Below are positions 50,501 to 64,000 of a DNA stretch of 64,000 nt, piece after piece; within the stretch, counting starts at the first letter, position 1, and the number at the start of each line of letters is the position of its first letter. Below the pieces are notes generated by a model. The model did not search any database. It was given only the letters and a program-made list of their open reading frames with translations, and was not told where the DNA came from. The position numbers and the translations under genes are program-made. Where the stretch lies: NCBI RefSeq assembly GCF_003918875.1, contig NW_025766558.1, positions 992,001 through 1,056,000 on the forward strand. The letters run 5' to 3'. This DNA is from Haliotis rubra. Lineage: Eukaryota.

Positions 50501-51622
50501 AACACTGCTTCCTATGAAGATGAAATATTTGTAGATTCGATTTTCCATTGTCGTTGCCGTATATCCACACAAGTCTCACCATTACCGTATATCCCTAAAT
50601 GCAGTATTCCACCAATATTCTAGTAATAGTCCAGCAGTATTCCACCACAATTCAGCAATACGAACACAAGGCACGCGCTTTTCATGAATTGAACGCGGTT
50701 TTTTTTGCCGTTACGTTACTCTGCAAAATTATCATCAGATATTTCCAACCGCTGTAACTATTCAAACTCTAGGACTGTAGACTTTGGAATATGTGTATTC
50801 TATACAATATCCCAACCAGACCTGTGTATGCACTTGTAAACCTAGGTGTCTAATGTGTAATAAAGAATGCGATGACATAGTAAATCACCAACCTGTATAT
50901 TGTACAGCTTAAACCGATGCAAGAAACATTCTTTGCGAGCATTTATTTGACACATTAAGCCTTCAACAGTACATAAGCATCGAAGACTGAGCAGATGACG
51001 AAGTCAAAATTGTGACATTGCTAGGTATAACCCCTATTGTAGAGAATATGAACCTTGGCACGTGGGCTGAATTCAGAGGATGTGTATCACGTGACATAAG
51101 CTCCTGGAGCCTGCGATCACTGCTTTATCTATAGACAGTGACTTAATTCTCACCAGAATCATCATGTATGTATACAGAGTATAGAGAGAGAGAAAGACAC
51201 ACACACACATAGTGTACTGTGTTCTACTGCACTTGTGTTTTTAAGTAATGAGTCCAACAACATCCCGTGCAGCCTGCAGTGGTCACCGCGCCACTAGCGG
51301 GTCTCATCCAAACATCAGCCTCGTGGGTCTTGTTTCAAGACACTCCAAGTGTTTATGTCAGATTTGATAGCGAAGTAGGCGGGAGTAGCCACAAATCTTC
51401 ATATACAGTGATAATGGGGTGGAATGTTGGTTGAAAGTATCACTTTAATACGTAGGTTTTGCTTTGATGACATACAACAGTCAGGTCATTGACAAATATC
51501 AGAATATAAAGATATGTGGATAACGTAGAGTGACCACTGATGTGGACCGACATGTTCAACATGTAGTAATAGTGTACCTGGTATGGGATGTTTTATTACA
51601 TTTTTACCCATGCTTACTGTCA

Positions 51623-51754
51623 TGACGTCATTATGTGACCATGTCTTCGTCTCCGCCTGCAGCGCGCACTCTACCACCGACGTCGGGGCTAGACCGGTTA
51701 AGCCCTGCGTACAGGGGCGTGTCTCTGTAATCCTGAGTGTTGTGCCATATATGG
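51623..51754. promoter_or_regulatory. Candidate CRE (TGACGTCA, 51623-51630) and CArG/SRF box (CCATATATGG, 51745-51754) upstream of the Rho-like gene
   Basis: Both are perfect consensus matches, ~120 bp apart, flanking a GC-rich patch 365-500 bp before the ATG. Confidence 0.5.
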
Positions 51755-52118
51755 AATGCGCGAGACCAGTGTTCTTGTAAGTGACTCGCGGATGCGGGCT
51801 TCCTATTGCCGGCTATTTACCGTTACTTCTGTGGAATGTCACAACCAGTCACTATTACTGGCAAAACAATACCATTATTTTCCTATCAACAAGCAGCCGA
51901 CGCCGTATATTCAATTGCTACGGATTGTACACCAACCTCGTATACAGGAGTACCCGGCCATTACATCATAACAGTGATATCTGTCGGGATAAAGACATCA
52001 TTTAGTCGCCTGAGCTACACAGTTCATCCCATCCTTTGAAAGAGAGAAATCCTTTTCGCTGCATTCAGAGCGTTAAGAGCACGCGGGGTTCACTATATTC
52101 ATCTGCAATTGCCAGACG

Positions 52119-55100
52119 ATGTCAAGCTCTGGCAAGCGACGAGTTATCAACAAGAACAGAACGCTGAAGGTGACCGTGGTCGGAGACAGTCAAGTGGGCA
52201 AGACTTGTTTGTTGCTGACTTACGTGACCAAGAAGTACCCAGCATGCGTTCCGGCGTCCTTCGAGTGGCATCTTGGTGAGTAGACGGAGACCCAGTCTGA
52301 GATCACACCTGAAACTACTGATCTAATGATATACGCCATTGAGTAGACGCATAACCAGTCTAAGACTCTTTGGACACTGTATGTATAGAGAGGGATACTC
52401 AGTCTGACATGGAATCACATCGGTATCAGACAGTAGCTTATATACACTGAGTAGAAGCGTACCCAGTCACACCATATGCGTATACCTTCGCTGGTACGGA
52501 GATATATATCGATAGCTCGCCATTTGACTAGAAGACCCCAGTTTGTCGGGTGCTGCTCCGAGGTGTTGTTCGGCGTTCGGCTTCTCCTTTGCACCAATTG
52601 TTCAATCAAATATTGTTGTACATATACATATGGCTGTGGTATATATAACCCTGGTATATGACCGTGCCATATGACTATGGTATATGACCGTGCCATATGA
52701 CTATGGTATATGACCGTGCCATATGACTATGGTATATGACCGTGGTATATGGCTATCGTATATGACCGTGGTATATGGCTATTGTATATGCCTCTGGTAT
52801 ATGGCTATGGTATATGGCCATGGTATATGGTTATGGTATATATGACCGTGGTATATGGCTATGGTTTATGACCGTGATATATGGCTATTGTTTATGACCG
52901 TGGTATATGGCTGTGGTATATGGCCGTGGTATATGGTTGTGGTATATATGACCGTGGTATATGGCTATGGTATATATGACCGTGATATATGGCTATGGTT
53001 TATGACCGTGGTATATGGCTGTGGTATATGGCCGTGGTATATGGTTGTGGTATATATGACCGTGGTATATGGTCGTGGTATATATGACCGTGGTATATGG
53101 TTGTGGTATATATGACCGTGGTATATGGCTATGGTATATATGACCGTGATATATGGCTATGGTTTATGACCGTGGTATATGGCTGTGGTATATGGCCGTG
53201 GTATATGGTTGTGGTATATATGACCGTGGTTTTATGGCTATGGTATATATGACCGTGATATATGGCTATGGTTTATGACCGTGGTATATGGCTGTGGTAT
53301 ATGGCCGTGGTATATGGTTGTGGTATATATGACCGTGGTTTTATGGCTATGGTATATATGACCGTGATATATGGCTATGGTTTATGACCGTGGTATATGA
53401 CTGTGGTATATGGCCGTGGTATATGGTTGTGGTATATATGACCGTGGTTTTATGGCTATGGTATATATGACCGTGGTATATGACCGTGGTATATGGTTGT
53501 GATATATGACCGTGGTATATGGCTGTGGTATATGGTTGTGGTATATGACTGTGGTATATGGCTGTGGTATATGATCGTGGTATATGCCTGTGTAATATGA
53601 CCCTGATATATGTCTATGGTATATAACTGTGTTATATGGTTGTGATATATGACCGTGGGATATGGCTGTGGTATATGGTTGTGGTATATGACCGTGGTGT
53701 ATGGCCAAGGTATATGATCGTGGTATATGCCTGTGTAATATGACCCTGATATATGTCTATGGTATATGACCGTGTTATATGGCCGTGGTATATGGCTGTG
53801 GTATACGATCGTGGTATATGCCTGGTATATGACCGTGGTATATGCCTGTGTAATATGACCCTGATATATGTCTATGGTATATGACCGTGTTATATGGCCG
53901 TGGTATATGGCTGTGGTATACGATCGTGGTATATGCTTGTGTAATATGACCCTGATATATGTCTATGGTATATGACCGTGTTATATGACTATGGCATAGG
54001 TATATAGTAAATGATCTTCGCCTACTATCACGTTATATCCAAACATCGACACTAACGTAAGTAACCAAGGCTCGAGGATCTGCACTCTAGAAATCGGGAA
54101 AAAACCGCCTTGTGTGAGCATTTGTTGACTGTAACTTCACCATATCCAAGCCAGGCCCGGATGTTATATCACGAGTGTTGATGTGTGATGCATGCTACTA
54201 GAATGTCCCATTTAGACGCTACTCAACCATTTCCCTTTGCATTGCCACCACACAATCTACACTCTGCCTCTCCAGCATCTCGCGGATGACAGGGGTGCCG
54301 ATCCATCAGGTCGCCTGTATAACGGTTCTCCCCTCCAAAACAGCTGATATGAGACCAGTATGATTATATAGTGGGTCACTATGTACATTAACATTTATTA
54401 ACCACCAACATCGAAAGATATGCTAATATGTTGTGCTGTAATGTCGCTCTAAATTGACAGCCGCCTGCTGATGCTGTGACATTTCCACTGTAGTCGACGC
54501 TGCTCGCCCTGTTTACATTGCCTAGAACCAAATACAGCAGCGGACATATTCCACATTAGATCAAGCAGTTAGGGTTTCGACAAAACCAGATTCCCCTCCC
54601 TTTCACATTTTTAATGTCCTCAGGATTTGAAAACAAAGACATCAGTGTTAGCTTGGCAAACAAAATCAATTCAGCGGGCCTGCCCGTTTCTATAATATGA
54701 AAAATGTCATTTTGATTTTCTTACACATATAATCCTTTGGTTGACACAGTTGAACATAACTTTTGGGAAGTTCTGTCCTTCTAAACCTAACTTGTATGTG
54801 TATCGCCAAGAACCCTTTTTCATTTGATTTATTTATGACATACATGTAGAAACATGTTCACGAAACAGTATGTTTTGTATTGGATGATTATACATTATAT
54901 AATACTTTATCGCCTGCGTACACAATGTATCTTCACAACAGTAATGTATATTAATAATACTTAAAATTCATAAATACATTTCCCAGGGTTATTTCTCAAT
55001 ATGTATGACCTATATTAATATTCCGCTCAAATGGATAAAATATTACAATACCATTAGTGACCCACACCTTTCATTCATTACTGAAGTATGTGAGAGGTGA

Positions 55101-56551
55101 AGAATGCCAACAGCTGATATACCCTTATGTTACTTCTGTTCCAGCCGGGACCGGTTTCAGCCAGAGCACCTACCCAAACATCCAGGTTGACGGACAGCGT
55201 TACGATCTCGACTTCACCGACACTTTGGGACTGGTCAGTACCTTGGACATTGGCTCAATGTCGTGTTATATACATGATGAACCCAGAGTGGTGTTTTGTG
55301 TTTGCAGGGTGGTGTGTAGAGTGTGGAGTGTGTAGAATGATTACCCCGACGTCTTCCAGGAGTGGCGACATCTGTGTATCTGTGTCAGAGAACGGGTGTC
55401 AGTTTCTCTTGTCTACACAGCTCGTGCAATCCTCACATGCATTTGTTTATTTTTATAAAGAAAAGTAATACGCAGTTGATTTTTTCAAACTGTTCAAGGA
55501 AAACATGTCTTCATGTGGTATTACATTACTGGCAAAGGGTAGGCCTGTCTCATGACTCGTCCTTCTGCGTACATCATCTGTGGACTGCCACCGATCCCCT
55601 CAACGCGATGACATCGGCGGCCCTGGTTATGGCTGAATGTTGTTTTATTCCGCACCGTCAGCTACAAATGATTGATTCTGTACCGGGCGATTCGCTGGGC
55701 GATATCATGACCACCATATCAGACCACAGAGTCGAACCACCCGATCCTCATTCTAGTCTGCTCTTACAGCAAGCACGGGGATAAAAGGACACATAGGTTG
55801 CCCTCGTTACATGATCAATGCTTTGTTTTTATAAAAGATTCTCTTAAGAAACGTAAAATACATTAAAAATGTAATTTAAAAAATTATGTTCTCGAGTCTT
55901 ATTTCTCTTAAATATTTAAATTTTGATAGAAACAAAGAATTCCATCTTAACTGAAAAGAAGGTACTAGTGAGGTCAACCTGCACAACGTGACAGGCTTGC
56001 TTCATATAGGTCTTTAACACTGCAGTAAGGGTGGAGGGAAACAACATGGTTCAGGAACAGTCACACAGACTGGATGCAGTCAATGTAAACATTGAATCCT
56101 TTCTATATACTTTTCGTCATTGTTTCAGGACAGTTCCCTGTCTCTACGGCTGCTGGAGTATATGACCACTGATGTGTTCGTCGTCTGCTTCGACATTTCC
56201 TGTCCTGAATCTTTTGAAAATGTGCGGGAAAAATGGATGCCGGAAATCCGGTCTGCTCAGCCTGAGATCCCAATAATCATAGTTGGTACCAAACTAGACC
56301 TACGGAACAATTCCGATGTGAAGTCGGGCTTAGCCGAGATCGGGAAAAAGCCCGTTTTGCACGAGGAAGGTCAGAGGTTGGCACGTGAGTTGAAGGTCGT
56401 GGACTATGTCGAGTGTTCGTCTCTTAATAACGATGGCGTCAGGTCAGTGTTTCTGACAGCTGCGCACGCAGCTTGTATGGCAAAGAAGAGCCGGGTTGGT
56501 GGAGGTGAAAGTGAGAAAGAGGAGGACTGCTGCAGGTGTGTCATACTATGA
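52119..56551 (+). CDS. Atypical Rho-family (Rac/Cdc42-related) small GTPase, 222 aa, 3 exons
   Basis: Exons 52119-52275, 55145-55233, 56129-56551 (669 nt, phases 1 and 0). G1 GDSQVGKT, switch I CVPASF, G3 DTLGL, TDVFVVCF...SFENVREKWMPEI, G4 GTKLDLR, Rho insert, G5 ECSS, CaaX CVIL. Confidence 0.92.
52625..53995. repeat. Degenerate 12/14-bp minisatellite (TATGRCYGTGGTA) in Rho-gene intron 1
   Basis: Visible tandem array with higher-order blocks. Confidence 0.92.
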
Positions 56552-57359
56552 ACGGGATCTTACGCGGAATTTCTTATCGAAAACCAACACATTCAATAGC
56601 AACATTCCGTCGCCCTTCCCGTGGAAGTCGATACCATCACTCGGCTCCTTCAATGACGTGTTAATAAACTGGATGTTCCAGGCGTTCGTCTGTAGGATCG
56701 GTTTCTGGGCTTGCCAAGTCTGGATTTGCTTCAATAAGCTGTCCCTGTTAAACATTCATGGGGGATCATCCACATTGTAGAAGTCCATTGACTCCAGTAG
56801 GTAATATCCGAAGTAGCCTACAGCCAATCGACCATTTTAAACATATATTATACTAGTATTTGGGATTACACTTTCTCTGTAAAGTACAGATTCTAGTACT
56901 TGTTTTGGGTTGAGTCCCATCCGGGATTCTAAAATGGCATGGTGTATTTCACAACCATTTGAATGTGAGAATGCAGTAGCTTCCAATGTATTATAATACC
57001 GTGTAAATAGTGTCTCCTGTACCGTTAGTCTTCAGGGCTCGTGTTTCGGTAAACACTAAACAGTGGGTCCATTCCTTTGGTTTCCTCGATCCCAACCCGT
57101 TGATTTCATCAACCAGTTTATTTTGCCAAGCTACTCGGTCTAACGGACCAGTAAGAATGCGGGTTGCAAAGAAGCCCCAATGATTACACTGACTGACACG
57201 CTAACGAAAGCCCTCAATAAATTTCTTGATGGAAAAAATGCGTTAAAACGAGTTGGCGAGTCCCGATGCTAGCAAGCACTGCCTGTAATGTAATGCAACA
57301 GGAATGGACCCAGGGCTTGGTGAGGTTTACCGACATGCAAGGCACCAAGAAAAAGAGGA

Positions 57360-57521
57360 CTGACTGAGTTTGGTTTTACGCCGCTTTTAGCAATATTCCA
57401 GCTACATCACGGCGGGGGACACCAGAAATGGGCTTCACACATTGTACCCATGTGGGGATTCGAACCCTGGTCTTCGGCGTGACGAGCCAACGCTTTAACC
57501 ACTAGGCTACCCCACCGCCCC
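57360..57521 (-). mobile_element. tRNA-derived SINE (family A), full length
   Basis: Very similar to 35757-35921; aaagaggac on both flanks (TSD-like). Confidence 0.9.
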
Positions 57522-61029: not shown

Positions 61030-61850
61030 GTCAAATTCTCAGCATCGGAATCCTCCGCTATTCCTCATGGAGTGCCAGTGTTAGTTCCTGCAGTTTTTGA
61101 ACAGCTCAAACTTGGCGTCCAATATTGCCCCAAAGATGTTCCAGAATTTCATATCGGGGCGGTAATGTATTGATGGCGTCCATGAATATCGGACGACTGG
61201 CAAGGGGGTGGCAATCAAAATGTGGTTCAACGGCGGTACCTAGTACTTTCTGTTGATAACATTGACTATTTAGTGTTGCAGTCACACGAAACTGACCCAC
61301 ACCATCACTGAGGCATCACCAAAGGGTTCCGCTGCACGGATCATCTTTATATCCCACACCGGCAGTGTAGAAGGCAGCAACCGTCATCAGACCAATGTCC
61401 CTATGTCCTCAAGTGGCGGTTATCTGTCCACGTAAGGCGTTCCTGTCTGTGTGTACCTGGGAGGAAGAAACGTGTGACCGGGAGACGTCTGACCGGGAGA
61501 CGTCTGATCGGGGGACGTATGACCGGGGGACGTCTGATCGGGGGACGTCTGACCGGGGGACGTCTGACCTGGAGACGTGTGACCGGGGAGACGTCTGACC
61601 GGGGGACGTCTGACCGGGAGACGTCTGACCGGGGGACGCCTGATCGGGGGACGTCTGCTCGCACGACGTTCCCACAAACCAGTAGCAGGCAGCCTCCTTC
61701 TGGTGGTACTGGTCACGGAGAATCGGACAGTTTTTCGGCCTGGGTCATGTGGTATTGCGTCTGGCCAGACGGACACCACGGTCATTGTTCTTCCTCAGTC
61801 TTCCAGGTCTTCGCTTTACAAGCAGACTAATCTCCGTGTGGTTCATGTTC
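61030..61850 (-). mobile_element. Tc1-family transposase relic carrying an internal 15-bp minisatellite (61470-61657)
   Basis: ...TTRRRLPATGLWERRASRRP-(RRPPV)n-...THRQERLTW, then LNSQCYQQKVL...VEPHFD...PIFMD...LEHLWGNIGR. Confidence 0.75.
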
Positions 61851-62283: not shown

Positions 62284-63635
62284 CTTGTAGTATTTACCAA
62301 TACATGTCTTGCAGTATTTACCAATACATGTCTTGCAGTATTTACCAATACATGTCTTGCAGTATTTACCCATACATGTCTTGTAGTATTTACCCATACA
62401 TGTCTTGCAGTATTTACCCATACATGTCTTGTAGTATTTACCATTACATGTCTTGCAGTATTTACCAATACATGTCTTGCAGTATTTACCCATACATGTC
62501 TTGCAGTATTTACCAATACATGTCTTGCAGTATTTACCCATACATGTCTTGTAGTATTTACCAATACATGTCTTGCAGTATTTACCAATACATGTCTTGC
62601 AGTATTTACCCATACATGTCTTGCAGTATTTACCCATACATGTCTTGCAGTATTTACCCATACATGTCTTGCAGTATTTACCAATACATGTCTTGCAGTA
62701 TTTACCCATACATGTCTTGCAGTATTTACCCATACATGTCTTGCAGTATTTACCAATACATGTCTTGCAGTATTTACCAATACATGTCTTGCAGTATTTA
62801 CCCATACATGTCTTGTAGTATTTACCCATACATGTCTTGCAGTATTTACCCATACATGTCTTGTAGTATTTACCAATACATGTCTTGCAGTATTTACCCA
62901 TACATGTCTTGCAGTATTTACCAATACATGTCTTGCAGTATTTACCAATACATGTCTTGCAGTATTTACCAATACATGTCTTGCAGTATTTACCAATACA
63001 TGTCTTGCAGTATTTACCAATACATGTCTTGCAGTATTTACCAATACATGTCTTGCAGTATTTACCCATACATGTCTTGCAGTATTTACCAATACATGTC
63101 TTGCAGTATTTACCAATACATGTCTTGCAGTATTTACCAATACATGTCTTGCAGTATTTACCAATACATGTCTTGCAGTATTTACCAATACATGTCTTGC
63201 AGTATTTACCAATACATGTCTTGCAGTATTTACCAATACATGTCTTGCAGTATTTACCAATACATGTCTTGCAGTATTTACCCATACATGTCTTGCAGTA
63301 TTTACCCATACATGTCTTGCAGTATTTACCCATACATGTCTTGTAGTATTTACCCATACATGTCTTGCAGTATTTACCCATACATGTCTTGCAGTATTTA
63401 CCAATACATGTCTTGCAGTATTTACCAATACATGTCTTGCAGTATTTACCAATACATGTCTTGCAGTATTTACCCATACATGTCTTGCAGTATTTACCAA
63501 TACATGTCTTGCAGTATTTACCAATACATGTCTTGCAGTATTTACCAATGCATGTCTTGCCGTATTTACCAATACATGTCTTGCAGTATTTACCCATACA
63601 TGTCTTGTAGTATTTAGCCATACATGTCTTGCAGT
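62284..63635. repeat. 24-bp minisatellite (GCAGTATTTACCMATACATGTCTT), ~56 copies
   Basis: Visible array; the unit is a multiple of 3 and lacks stops in several frames, which produces the 440-490 aa pseudo-ORFs. Confidence 0.97.
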
Positions 63636-63710: not shown

Positions 63711-64000
63711 ATTCGGGCAGAAAGAGAGCAGGGGATAACAGCATTCGGGCAGAAAGAGAGCAGGGGATAACAGCATTCGGGCAGAAAGAGAGCAGGGGAT
63801 AACAGCATTCGGGCAGAATGAGAGCAGGGGATAACAACATTCGGGCAGAAAGAGAGCAGGGGATAACAACATTCGGGCAGAAAGAGAGCAGGGGATAACA
63901 ACATTCGGGCAGAAAGAGAGCAGGGGATAACAACATTTGGGCAGAAAGAGAGCAGGGGATAACAACATTCGGGCAGAATGAGAGCAGGGGATAACATTCA
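63711..64000. repeat. 32-bp minisatellite (ATTCGGGCAGAAAGAGAGCAGGGGATAACARC), runs off the window
   Basis: About 9 copies visible. Confidence 0.95.

What the first reader, a model, noticed from the sequence alone, without database searches (positions are those of the whole stretch)
52119..56551. Atypical Rho GTPase naturally carrying G12S + A59L + Q61L (hydrolysis-dead type) and a rebuilt switch I
Seen: the spliced protein has GDSQVGKT, KKYPACVPASFEWHLAGTGFSQSTYPN and FTDTLGLDSSLSLR, where Rac1 has GDGAVGKT, AFPGEYIPTVFDNY and WDTAGQEDYDRLR. In Rac1 numbering this is G12S, F28Y, Y32C, T35A, W56T, A59L, Q61L plus a ~9-10 aa insertion after switch I. G4, G5 and the CaaX box are intact and there are no stops or frameshifts. 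Established: substitutions at 12/59/61 abolish GTP hydrolysis in Rnd1-3 and RhoH; Q61L is the classic activating mutation; T35A blocks canonical effector binding. Inference: this is an independently evolved invertebrate GTP-locked or pseudo-GTPase Rho with non-canonical partners (or a GAP/GEF decoy), possibly an undescribed lineage-specific Rho subfamily.
Basis: partly seen in the sequence, partly recalled or inferred. Interest (0 to 1): 0.72.

Follow-up and report, generated by a model that had tools for sequence, protein, structure and literature searches.

The report
Mollusc-specific hydrolysis-deficient-type Rho GTPase gene
This abalone gene is real, spliced in transcript contigs and under strong purifying selection; it encodes a Rho-family switch protein that lacks the residues needed to turn itself off and belongs to an apparently undescribed mollusc-only branch of the family.

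Summary
Three GT-AG exons (52119-52275, 55145-55233, 56129-56551, + strand) give a 222-aa protein identical to the RefSeq model "cdc42 homolog" of Haliotis rubra. Against Cdc42/Rac it carries G12S, T35A, W56T, A59L and Q61L plus a 10-residue insert after switch I. The nucleotide-binding motifs, the Rho insert and the CaaX box are kept.

It is not a decaying copy. Four Haliotis species keep every atypical residue, with dN/dS of 0.05-0.08 (0.025 in the core). Spliced contigs confirm the exon 2-3 junction. No alternative exon encodes PTVF or DTAGQ.

A 53%-identical orthologue exists in Gigantopelta. Mytilus, Tegillarca and Mactra proteins form one clade with it and share the 3-exon layout, the insert and the loss of T35, A59 and Q61. 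The clade lies outside Rac/Cdc42/RhoA, and orthology to Cdc42 is rejected (p-AU 0.027). Bivalves also have a separate Rnd.

The best reading is an ancient molluscan subfamily of membrane-anchored Rho proteins that bind nucleotide but cannot hydrolyse GTP, with a rebuilt effector face. This would be a parallel to Rnd and RhoH. The biochemistry is inferred, not shown. An earlier scan note reports another atypical Rho cluster elsewhere in this genome.

The parts
52119..52275 (+). Exon 1 coding part (Met1 to the first base of codon 53). It holds the P-loop GDSQVGKT (52182-52205) and the rebuilt switch I YPACVPASFEWHL (52236-52274).
   Evidence: The donor is TTG|gtgagt. The same exon end is found in H. 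asinina, H. rufescens and H. cracherodii.
52276..55144 (+). Intron 1 (2869 nt, phase 1). It contains a 26-bp x 50 minisatellite at 52642-53989.
   Evidence: Intron length varies from 2232 to 3301 nt among Haliotis species.
55145..55233 (+). Exon 2. It encodes the 10-residue insert AGTGFSQSTY (its first base is 52275 at the end of exon 1; then 55145-55173), beta2/beta3 and DTLGL (55219-55233), and ends exactly after residue 61 (Rac1 numbering).
   Evidence: Spliced contigs of runs X1 and X3 start their match at 55144/55145 and join 55232/55233 to 56128/56129.
55234..56128 (+). Intron 2 (895 nt, phase 0, GT..AG).
   Evidence: 'skips 895, GT..AG' in X1 and X3. The stretch is collinear in the DNA contig of X16.
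56129..56551 (+). Exon 3 coding part. It holds the rest of switch II (DSSLSLRLLEY), G4 TKLD (56288-56299), the Rho insert, G5 CSSL (56414-56425), the upstream cysteines CC and the CaaX box CVIL (56537-56548), then the stop codon TGA.
   Evidence: (PF00071, 73 bits).
56552..56927 (+). 3' untranslated region, at least as far as the spliced contigs reach. From 56857 it runs into a very high-copy interspersed repeat.
   Evidence: table 8 (records 1 and 24) and table 2 (depth rises about 1000-fold from 56766).

Best explanation
The locus is a functional three-exon gene of the blacklip abalone. It encodes a 222-residue Rho-family protein that belongs to an old, apparently mollusc-restricted subfamily. 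The members seen here are four Haliotis species, Gigantopelta (two tandem genes), Mytilus, Tegillarca and Mactra.

Shown: the gene is spliced as modelled, is under strong purifying selection, has the Rho fold and Rho insert, and keeps every residue that contacts the nucleotide and Mg2+ (G10, G15, K16, T17, aromatic 28, D57, T58, G60, K116, D118, S158). The whole clade lacks the hydrolysis and switch residues (Q61, A59, T35, mostly G12). It shares an 8-13-residue insert between switch I and beta2, and a private exon layout.

Inferred: the protein binds guanine nucleotide but cannot hydrolyse GTP, either on its own or with an arginine-finger RhoGAP. It would therefore sit permanently GTP-loaded, like Rnd and RhoH. 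Its output would be set by expression, turnover and localisation rather than by GEF/GAP cycling. CVIL predicts geranylgeranylation, and the conserved upstream cysteines (CCxCVIL) predict RhoB-like palmitoylation and membrane anchoring. Without T35, and with a remodelled switch I, insert and switch II face (identical from abalone to Gigantopelta over CVPASFEWHLAG), it probably does not engage canonical CRIB or rhotekin-type effectors. It would instead signal through, or sequester, lineage-specific partners.
For: Gene model and identity to RefSeq.

Splicing: the spliced contigs are about 97% identical to the window and join exon 2 to exon 3. All three of their coding differences are synonymous.

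Selection: pairwise dN/dS is 0.05-0.08 at dS 0.28-0.62. In the G-domain core it is 0.024-0.029. All atypical residues are invariant in four species.

Orthologue: Gigantopelta P0159 is 53% identical, with identical switch I, an insert of the same length at the same position, and DTLGM.

Clade: the ten-row clade has support 99/77 in the careful tree. It is still monophyletic at 87/69 after removing the P-loop, switch I, insert and switch II columns.

Exon layout: the three-exon layout with an intron exactly after residue 61 is shared by Haliotis, both Gigantopelta genes, Tegillarca and Mactra. A bivalve Rac1 instead has introns at residues 12, 36, about 75 and 96.

Residues: the residue table is.

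Fold: the AlphaFold2 model has pLDDT 86 and matches RhoA, Rac and Cdc42 structures with TM about 0.9 when normalised by the target.

Established knowledge: loss of Gly12 and Gln61 makes Rnd1-3 and RhoH GTPase-deficient and constitutively GTP-bound (PMC8305018; PMC13236570).
Against: No biochemical datum exists; GTPase deficiency is read from residues only. Rap proteins lack Gln61 and are still switched off by a GAP that supplies the catalytic residue, so a dedicated GAP cannot be excluded. Loss of T35 and a bulky Leu at position 59 could weaken Mg2+/GTP binding, leaving a GDP-bound or empty protein. Support for the union of the gastropod and bivalve branches is moderate (SH-aLRT 77 and 69), and these are long branches. 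Rnd, RhoH, RhoBTB and RhoD/F sequences could not be included in the tree. The runs with spliced contigs are only guessed to be RNA. Tissue and expression level are unknown.
Confidence: 0.6

Rival explanations
1. It is still a regulated on/off switch. GTP is hydrolysed with help in trans from a dedicated GAP that supplies the catalytic residue (as RapGAP does for Rap, which has Thr61), or by another residue in cis. The unusual switch regions would reflect co-evolution with private regulators.
For: All nucleotide-binding residues and G60 are conserved across the clade. The switch I segment CVPASFEWHLAG is identical between abalone and Gigantopelta, as expected for a surface that docks a conserved partner, which could be a regulator. 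Position 61 varies within the clade (L, M, G, T), so it is not itself under strict constraint.
Against: Nine of the ten clade members also carry Ser at position 12, which, from established knowledge, hinders arginine-finger GAPs. T35, which closes switch I on the gamma-phosphate, is missing in all but Mactra. No candidate GAP is known. In the known Rho cases with this residue pattern (Rnd, RhoH) no hydrolysis is found.
Confidence: 0.2
2. It is a pseudo-GTPase that no longer uses GTP at all. It would be nucleotide-free or locked on GDP, acting as a prenylated scaffold or as a decoy that titrates GEFs, GDIs or other Rho regulators.
For: T35A removes a Mg2+/gamma-phosphate ligand, and A59L puts a bulky side chain next to the phosphate site. 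The switch II residues Y64 and R66 are replaced in Haliotis.
Against: The P-loop, D57, G60, TKxD and the G5 serine are invariant in a clade that spans gastropods and bivalves. The core dN/dS is about 0.025. Such conservation is hard to explain if no nucleotide is bound. Other GTPase families tolerate large residues at the second x of DxxG (own knowledge).
Confidence: 0.15
3. It is an ordinary Cdc42 or Rac orthologue (as the RefSeq names say), a member of the Rnd subfamily, or a decaying duplicate of one of these.
For: RefSeq product names are 'cdc42 homolog', 'cell division control protein 42-like' and 'rac1B-like'. The best solved-structure hits are Cdc42, RhoG and Rac1. By eye, GDSQ.GKT and CFDIS also occur in zebrafish Rnd3/RhoE (PMC4669188, S1 Table).
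Against: Identity to Cdc42 or Rac is only about 40-46%. Holding the gene with canonical Cdc42 costs 50.8 lnL (p-AU 0.027). The clade lies outside the Rac/Cdc42/RhoG/Mtl/RhoUV group (93/99). Rnd hallmarks are absent: an intact YVPTVFENY switch I, WDTSG, GCK[ST]DL, and a long tail ending in CaaM. Bivalves have a separate Rnd. Decay is excluded by dN/dS of 0.05-0.08 and by conservation as far as Gigantopelta.
Confidence: 0.04

Closest known systems
Rnd1-3 (RhoE/Rnd3 and relatives), GTPase-deficient atypical Rho proteins
   Same: Both are Rho-fold proteins with a non-glycine residue at position 12 and no Gln at 61, and are prenylated at a CaaX box. By analogy this gene's product is expected to be constitutively GTP-bound and controlled by expression and turnover (PMC8305018, PMC13236570).
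   Different: Rnd keeps a RhoA-like switch I with the threonine (YVPTVFENY) and has WDTSG, G4 GCK[ST]DL, no insert after switch I, a long C-terminal extension and a farnesyl CaaM box (sequences in PMC4669188 S1 Table). The abalone protein has A35, DTLGL, GTKLDL, a 10-residue insert and CVIL. Bivalves carry a separate Rnd gene.
RhoH
   Same: RhoH naturally lacks Gly12 and has a changed G3/switch II. It is GTPase-deficient, insensitive to GAPs, and its output is set by expression level.
   Different: RhoH is vertebrate-specific and haematopoietic. In the zebrafish sequence seen it has T35, a shortened Rho insert and an ATQTD G4. It has no switch I insert.
Cdc42 / Rac1 / RhoG (classical switches; the RefSeq name of this gene)
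   Same: These are the best sequence and structure matches (E about 1e-43, about 45% identity, TM about 0.9). The G4 is of the GTKLDLR type, the Rho insert has normal length, and the CaaL box predicts geranylgeranylation.
   Different: All catalytic and switch hallmarks (G12, Y32, T35, F/W56, A59, Q61, Y64, R66) are replaced. The exon layout differs. Orthology to Cdc42 is rejected by the AU test.
RhoB / TC10-type C-termini (prenyl plus palmitoyl)
   Same: Cysteines lie just upstream of the CaaX box (CCRCVIL in Haliotis, GCHCVVL in Gigantopelta), as in palmitoylated RhoB. RhoB binds GDI poorly and is GTP-loaded on synthesis.
   Different: This is a resemblance of the tail only. Palmitoylation is not tested, and the bivalve members have a single cysteine and a CaaS box (farnesyl type).
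Rap1/RapGAP (a switch without Gln61)
   Same: Rap has no glutamine at position 61 yet hydrolysis can still be regulated. This is the model for the main rival explanation (own knowledge).
   Different: Rap keeps G12 and T35 and belongs to the Ras family, not the Rho family.

Membership tests
Rho family of small GTPases | Ras-like G domain with a P-loop, DxxG and [NT]KxD | tested here: met
   Pfam PF00071 matches exons 1 and 3. TIGR00231 scores 76.6 bits. The motifs GDSQVGKT, DTLG and TKLD are present.
Rho family of small GTPases | Rho-specific helical insert between G4 and G5 | tested here: met
   The protein aligns to Cdc42 without gaps across the insert. The model has a helix at residues 144-152.
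Rho family of small GTPases | The closest solved structures and sequences are Rho proteins | tested here: met
   The best 60 PDB sequence hits are all Cdc42, RhoG or Rac1. The best 50 Foldseek hits are all Rho-family structures (RhoA/B/C, Rac1/Rac3, Cdc42, RhoG, one fungal Rho1), with target-normalised TM 0.85-0.94 for single-domain chains.
Rho family of small GTPases | C-terminal CaaX prenylation box | tested here: met
   CVIL lies at residues 219-222 and is conserved in four Haliotis species; Gigantopelta has CVVL. Prenylation itself was not tested.
Cdc42 subfamily (RefSeq product name) | Groups with canonical Cdc42 in a phylogeny | tested here: not met
   The free tree places it elsewhere. 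Forcing it together with Cdc42 costs 50.8 lnL, p-AU 0.027.
Cdc42 subfamily (RefSeq product name) | Canonical switch residues G12, T35, F56, Q61 and a TQIDLR G4 | tested here: not met
   The residues are S12, A35, T56, L61 and the G4 is TKLDLR.
Rnd subfamily | Non-Gly at position 12 and non-Gln at position 61 | tested here: met
   S12 and L61. Other lineages share this feature too, so it is not sufficient for membership.
Rnd subfamily | RhoA-like intact switch I (YVPTVFENY), WDTSG switch II and GCK[ST]DL G4 | tested here: not met
   The protein has CVPASFEWH plus the insert, TDTLG and GTKLDL. Compared by eye with BfRnd, DrRhoE, PyRnd and CgRnd in PMC4669188 S1 Table.
Rnd subfamily | Long C-terminal extension ending in a farnesyl CaaM box | tested here: not met
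   The tail is short and ends in CVIL.
Rnd subfamily | Groups with Rnd proteins in a phylogeny | not tested
Indirect evidence: all 60 listed PDB hits are Cdc42, RhoG or Rac1, and no Rnd signature occurs in any protein fetched in the searches.
Proposed molluscan atypical Rho clade (Haliotis, Gigantopelta 1 and 2, Mytilus, Tegillarca, Mactra) | Monophyly in a maximum-likelihood tree, also without the trait columns | tested here: met
   Support is 99/77 with all columns and 87/69 with the P-loop, switch I, insert and switch II columns removed. This is moderate support on long branches.
Proposed molluscan atypical Rho clade (Haliotis, Gigantopelta 1 and 2, Mytilus, Tegillarca, Mactra) | Three coding exons, with intron 2 exactly after residue 61 and one large 3' exon | tested here: met
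   Seen in four Haliotis species, both Gigantopelta genes, Tegillarca and Mactra. The Rac1 gene of Potamilus differs. The Mytilus genes were not examined.
Proposed molluscan atypical Rho clade (Haliotis, Gigantopelta 1 and 2, Mytilus, Tegillarca, Mactra) | No T35, A59, Q61 or W/F56; an 8-13-residue insert between switch I and beta2; nucleotide-contact residues kept | tested here: met
   Residue table and alignment. Exceptions: Mactra has Ser at position 35 and Gigantopelta-2 has Gly at position 12.
GTPase-deficient (constitutively GTP-bound) small GTPases | Binds GTP and shows no intrinsic or GAP-stimulated hydrolysis | not testable with these tools
   This needs recombinant protein. Here it is only inferred from residues 12, 35, 59 and 61.

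The most novel reading that the evidence does not exclude
Molluscs possess an ancient Rho subfamily of their own, predating the gastropod-bivalve split. It gave up the GTPase cycle independently of vertebrate Rnd and RhoH and built a new structured element after switch I as a private effector interface.

The subfamily lacks Y32, T35 and Q61. These are the residues that bacterial Rho-modifying toxins AMPylate, glucosylate or deamidate. It could therefore act as a toxin-insensitive cytoskeletal or immune signal, or as a decoy, in animals whose main pathogens are vibrios.
Probability: 0.1. Interest if true: 0.75.

Novelty: new variant of a known kind. Interest (0 to 1): 0.5.

Why it matters
Naturally GTPase-deficient Rho proteins are so far described in the chordate/vertebrate Rnd and RhoH lineages, with a Rnd also reported in bivalves. 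Reviews treat them as exceptions. This clade would be a second or third independent origin of a 'switch that cannot switch off', kept for hundreds of millions of years across a major phylum.

The clade combines loss of Q61, G12 and A59 with loss of the switch I threonine and a conserved insert. No described Rho subfamily shows that combination. It offers a natural experiment on which parts of the Rho switch can be dispensed with while nucleotide binding is retained.

In practical terms, the RefSeq and UniProt names for these genes ('cdc42 homolog', 'RHOQ', 'rac1B-like') are misleading. Studies that count Cdc42 or Rac transcripts in abalone or mussel immune or developmental data may be mixing them with a protein of quite different behaviour. 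Published bivalve Rho inventories (PMC4669188) do not list this group.

Tried and rejected
1. Alternative exons that would restore PTVF or DTAGQ. A six-frame motif scan and tblastn with Rac, Cdc42 and RhoA types over 51001-57500 found none.

2. A second copy or tandem paralogue in the window: none found.

3. Decaying duplicate: rejected by dN/dS and by deep conservation.

4. An abalone-only gene. The first word search and the 50%-clustered exhaustive search suggested this. A full-length word search then found the Gigantopelta orthologue, which had been hidden inside the 50% cluster.

5. The profile of the five orthologues does not separate the bivalve members (168 bits) from ordinary Rac (about 165 bits). 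The family's range therefore could not be mapped by score. It rests on the tree, the exon layout and the motifs.

6. P0071, a metagenome protein with the same GDSQVGKT and an insert, looked like kin but fell among Rac-like rows in the tree. P0016 joined the clade in the quick tree only.

7. Synteny between Haliotis, Gigantopelta, Tegillarca and Mactra: nothing detectable in the 8-10 kb flanks.

8. Atlas feature searches gave only generic Rho clusters.

9. Rnd, RhoH, RhoBTB and RhoD/F could not be added to the tree. The only copies seen were printed in a paper's supplement and have no reference, so that step was left out rather than typing them in.

10. Reads were laid on 54050-56950 only, to stay clear of the 1.3-kb minisatellite in intron 1. 
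Full report
**What is at the locus.** Between 52119 and 56551 on the + strand lie three exons with canonical borders: 52119-52275 (TTG|gtgagt), 55145-55233 (ttccag|CC ... CTG|gtcagt) and 56129-56551 (tttcag|GAC ... TGA). Joined, they give an open 669-nt frame and a 222-residue protein. That protein is identical to P0007, RefSeq XP_046571152.1 'cdc42 homolog' of Haliotis rubra. Pfam finds the Ras family domain in exons 1 and 3. The window holds no second copy.

**The observation.** In Rac1/Cdc42 numbering these are G12S, A13Q, F28Y, one residue lost at position 31, Y32C, T35A, V36S, N39W and Y40H. A 10-residue insert (AGTGFSQSTY) then precedes beta2. After it come T at position 56, A59L, Q61L, E62D, Y64S and R66S. 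The following are kept:
- the P-loop (GxxxxGKT)
- D57, T58 and G60
- the G4 motif TKLD
- the Rho insert
- the CaaX box CVIL, with two further cysteines just upstream

G5 reads SSL rather than SAL, a minor variant. A six-frame scan of 51001-57500 finds no alternative exon encoding PT[VIA]F or DT[AS]G[QS].

**Splicing in transcript contigs.** Logan contigs of two small runs of one study (X1 and X3; the tool guesses them to be RNA) cover only the exons. They join 55232/55233 directly to 56128/56129, skipping 895 nt with GT..AG ends. They then continue through the stop codon to about 56927. A contig of another run (X16) is collinear with the intron, as DNA would be. The spliced contigs are about 97% identical to the window. 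Their three coding differences are all synonymous. In X1 the contig carries 449 further letters upstream of exon 2, enough for exon 1 plus a 5' UTR. I did not lay reads on exon 1, to stay clear of the 26-bp x 50 minisatellite in intron 1. The exon 1-exon 2 junction therefore rests on the sharp start of the match at 55144/55145, on the reading frame, and on conservation of the same layout in other species.

**Selection.** I fetched the orthologous loci of H. asinina, H. rufescens and H. cracherodii and recovered their coding sequences. All have the same three exons and GT-AG borders, while intron lengths differ.
- Nei-Gojobori dN/dS is 0.05-0.08 for pairs with dS between 0.28 and 0.62.
- Bootstrap upper bounds are at most 0.14.
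- In the G-domain core dN/dS is 0.024-0.029.
- Most amino-acid changes lie in the N- and C-terminal tails.
- Every atypical residue and the insert are invariant, apart from one S/N difference in the insert.

This is not a decaying duplicate.

**Relatives.** The exhaustive search of 50%-identity representatives found nothing between the Haliotis cluster and generic Rho proteins. Cdc42-, RhoG-, RhoA-, Rac- and RhoU-type rows, as judged from their switch motifs, all scored 138-147 bits at about 45% identity. A full-length word search then uncovered P0159 of the vent snail Gigantopelta aegis (Neomphalina). It is 53% identical. It has GDSGVGKT, an identical CVPASFEWHLAG, an insert of the same length, DFSDTLGMD and CVVL. 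In Gigantopelta a second, more divergent gene lies 2 kb downstream. It encodes 203 aa with GDGGVGKT, LPGAMEWN, LVDTVGLDEY and CAIS, and has the same three-exon layout.

Four bivalve proteins share the pattern: Mactra P0088, Tegillarca P0292, and P0335, whose 90% cluster is Mytilus 'cdc42 homolog'/'RHOQ', with its relative P0295. They have GDSGVGKT, no threonine in switch I, a 12-13-residue insert at the same place with a shared AG..S.[FY]..P motif, LTDT[VI]G[LGT][DE], and a CaaS box.

**Is this one family?** Three lines of evidence agree.

(i) A careful IQ-TREE analysis of 75 Rho domains joins the four bivalve rows, both Gigantopelta genes and the four Haliotis rows.
- Support for the ten-row clade is ultrafast bootstrap 99 / SH-aLRT 77.
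- Haliotis plus Gigantopelta-1 has 100/95.
- (Gigantopelta-2, (Gigantopelta-1, Haliotis)) has 97/83.
- The clade lies outside a 93/99 group that holds the Rac, Cdc42, RhoG, Mtl and RhoU/V types, and outside the RhoA-like group.

(ii) I deleted the columns that carry the shared oddities (P-loop 12-13, switch I plus insert, switch II). The same ten rows are still monophyletic at 87/69, so convergence at the switch residues is not the sole cause.

(iii) Tegillarca and Mactra have the same private gene structure. Exon 2 ends exactly after residue 61 and one exon carries the rest. The Rac1 gene of the bivalve Potamilus has introns at residues 12, 36, about 75 and 96.

Holding Haliotis plus Gigantopelta-1 with canonical Cdc42 costs 50.8 log-likelihood units (p-AU 0.027). 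Support for the deepest node is moderate and the branches are long. I put the common origin of the gastropod and bivalve members at about 0.8.

**Not Rnd.** The only genome-wide molluscan Rho survey I found (Li et al. [quoted passage not shown] Its S1 Table prints PyRnd and CgRnd. They have WDTSG, GCKTDL, a long tail and CaaM, as chordate Rnd proteins do, and they have no switch I insert. Molluscs thus have a separate Rnd, and the present clade is not in that inventory. I could not put Rnd, RhoH, RhoBTB or RhoD/F in the tree, because no copy was available by reference. The indirect evidence is that all 60 listed PDB hits are Cdc42, RhoG or Rac1, and that no Rnd or RhoH signature occurs in any protein fetched in the searches. 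GDSQ.GKT and CFDIS also occur in zebrafish Rnd3. I regard this as convergence, but it is the reason a proper test is listed among the next steps.

**Structure.** AlphaFold2 with a 59-row alignment gives mean pLDDT 86.4 and pTM 0.83. The model has the full Rho fold, including the insert helix at 144-152. The region 48-55 (FEWHLAGT) is predicted helical at moderate confidence (pLDDT 70-83). Foldseek's best matches are RhoA, Rac and Cdc42 structures, with TM about 0.9 normalised by the target. A model of the Mytilus member is equally confident overall. It is again least certain in the switch I and insert segment, predicted there as short helical turns before beta2. The tools give no coordinates, so contacts of the insert could not be examined.

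**How it most likely works.** Shown: all ten clade members keep G10, G15, K16, T17, an aromatic residue at 28, D57, T58, G60, K116, D118 and S158. None has Q61, A59 or W/F56. Nine of ten lack a hydroxyl residue at position 35, and nine of ten have S12.

Established: Gly12 and Gln61 are critical for hydrolysis, and their natural absence makes Rnd1-3 and RhoH GTPase-deficient and constitutively GTP-bound. Palmitoylated RhoB escapes GDI and is GTP-loaded on synthesis (PMC8305018; PMC13236570). T35 ligates Mg2+ and the gamma-phosphate, and effector-loop mutants at T35 lose canonical effectors (own knowledge).

Inferred: the protein binds guanine nucleotide, cannot hydrolyse GTP, and is anchored to membranes by geranylgeranyl (CVIL), probably with palmitate on the upstream cysteines. 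It would act as an always-on or non-cycling signal whose level is set by transcription and turnover, and it would use a lineage-specific surface. The identity of CVPASFEWHLAG from abalone to Gigantopelta points to a conserved docking site. I give this 0.6.

The main rivals are a switch that still cycles with a dedicated trans-acting GAP, as in Rap/RapGAP (0.2), and a nucleotide-free or GDP-locked scaffold or decoy (0.15). An ordinary Cdc42, Rac or Rnd orthologue, or a decaying copy, is essentially excluded (0.04).

**Novelty and context.** The gene models exist in RefSeq under inconsistent automatic names. I found no paper describing the group. It is a new variant of a known kind: a further, probably independent, lineage of hydrolysis-deficient-type Rho proteins, with a feature set (no T35, a conserved insert, a private intron pattern) not seen in Rnd or RhoH.

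I could not examine it. It suggests that abalone carries more than one atypical Rho lineage, which lowers the singularity of this gene but raises the interest of the phylum. Other isolated natural position-61 variants also turned up in molluscs, for example Batillaria P0316 (DTSGLC) and Ruditapes P0128 (GDACVGKT, DTSGLD).

**Verdict.** Interest 0.5.

Noticed in passing
window 52642-53989: Intron 1 holds a 1.35-kb minisatellite of about 50 copies of a 26-bp unit (TGGTATATGACCGTGGTATATGGCTG; 82% matches). Intron 1 length differs by more than 1 kb among Haliotis species.
   Followed up: partly
window 56857-56929: A short element in the 3' UTR or flank is present at enormous copy number in the DNA runs laid (summed contig depth up to about 1.4 million, against 16 for the gene). 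Many contigs end or begin there. It is probably a SINE-like interspersed repeat.
   Followed up: no
window 61470-61657, 62284-63635, 63711-63996: Three more minisatellites lie downstream of the gene (15-bp x 12.5, 24-bp x 56, 32-bp x 9). The 24-bp array creates stop-free ORFs of 440-490 aa in several frames on both strands, which are not genes. The seven ORFs scanned from 43-64 kb (of those at least 110 aa long) had no Pfam match reaching the curated cut-off.
   Followed up: partly
L004:14603-18240 (Gigantopelta aegis CM027793.1): A tandem paralogue lies 2 kb downstream of the Gigantopelta orthologue. It encodes 203 aa with G12 kept but LPGAMEWN in switch I, LVDTVGLDEY, an unusual G4 (GMKTD) and CAIS. 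It has the same three-exon layout. No counterpart exists within 7.4 kb downstream in the abalone window.
   Followed up: partly
L002 (H. rufescens JALGQA010000051.1), whole locus, minus strand: The H. rufescens annotation has a 358-aa gene on the opposite strand whose span covers the whole 10.6-kb locus. The Rho gene may therefore sit inside an intron of another gene. No such call exists in the H. asinina or H. cracherodii loci.
   Followed up: no
P0071 (ENA metagenome contig, 215 aa): An unnamed protein has the identical P-loop GDSQVGKTCLLL, an insert after switch I, CSSL, and a switch II with G60/Q61 deleted (WDTF--ERGD). It did not join the molluscan clade in the tree. Its source organism is unknown.
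   Followed up: partly
P0316 (Batillaria attramentaria), P0128 (Ruditapes philippinarum), P0013 (Batillaria): Further molluscan Rho-like proteins have natural changes at position 61 or 12 (DTSGLC; GDACVGKT with DTSGLD; GDSACGKT with DTAGVD). They group with Rac-, Cdc42- or RhoA-type rows rather than with this clade. Loss of catalytic residues seems to have happened repeatedly in molluscs.
   Followed up: no
Databases: Members of one clade carry at least six different automatic names: 'cdc42 homolog', 'cell division control protein 42-like', 'ras-like GTP-binding protein RHO', 'uncharacterized protein', 'rho-related protein rac1B-like' and 'RHOQ'.
   Followed up: yes
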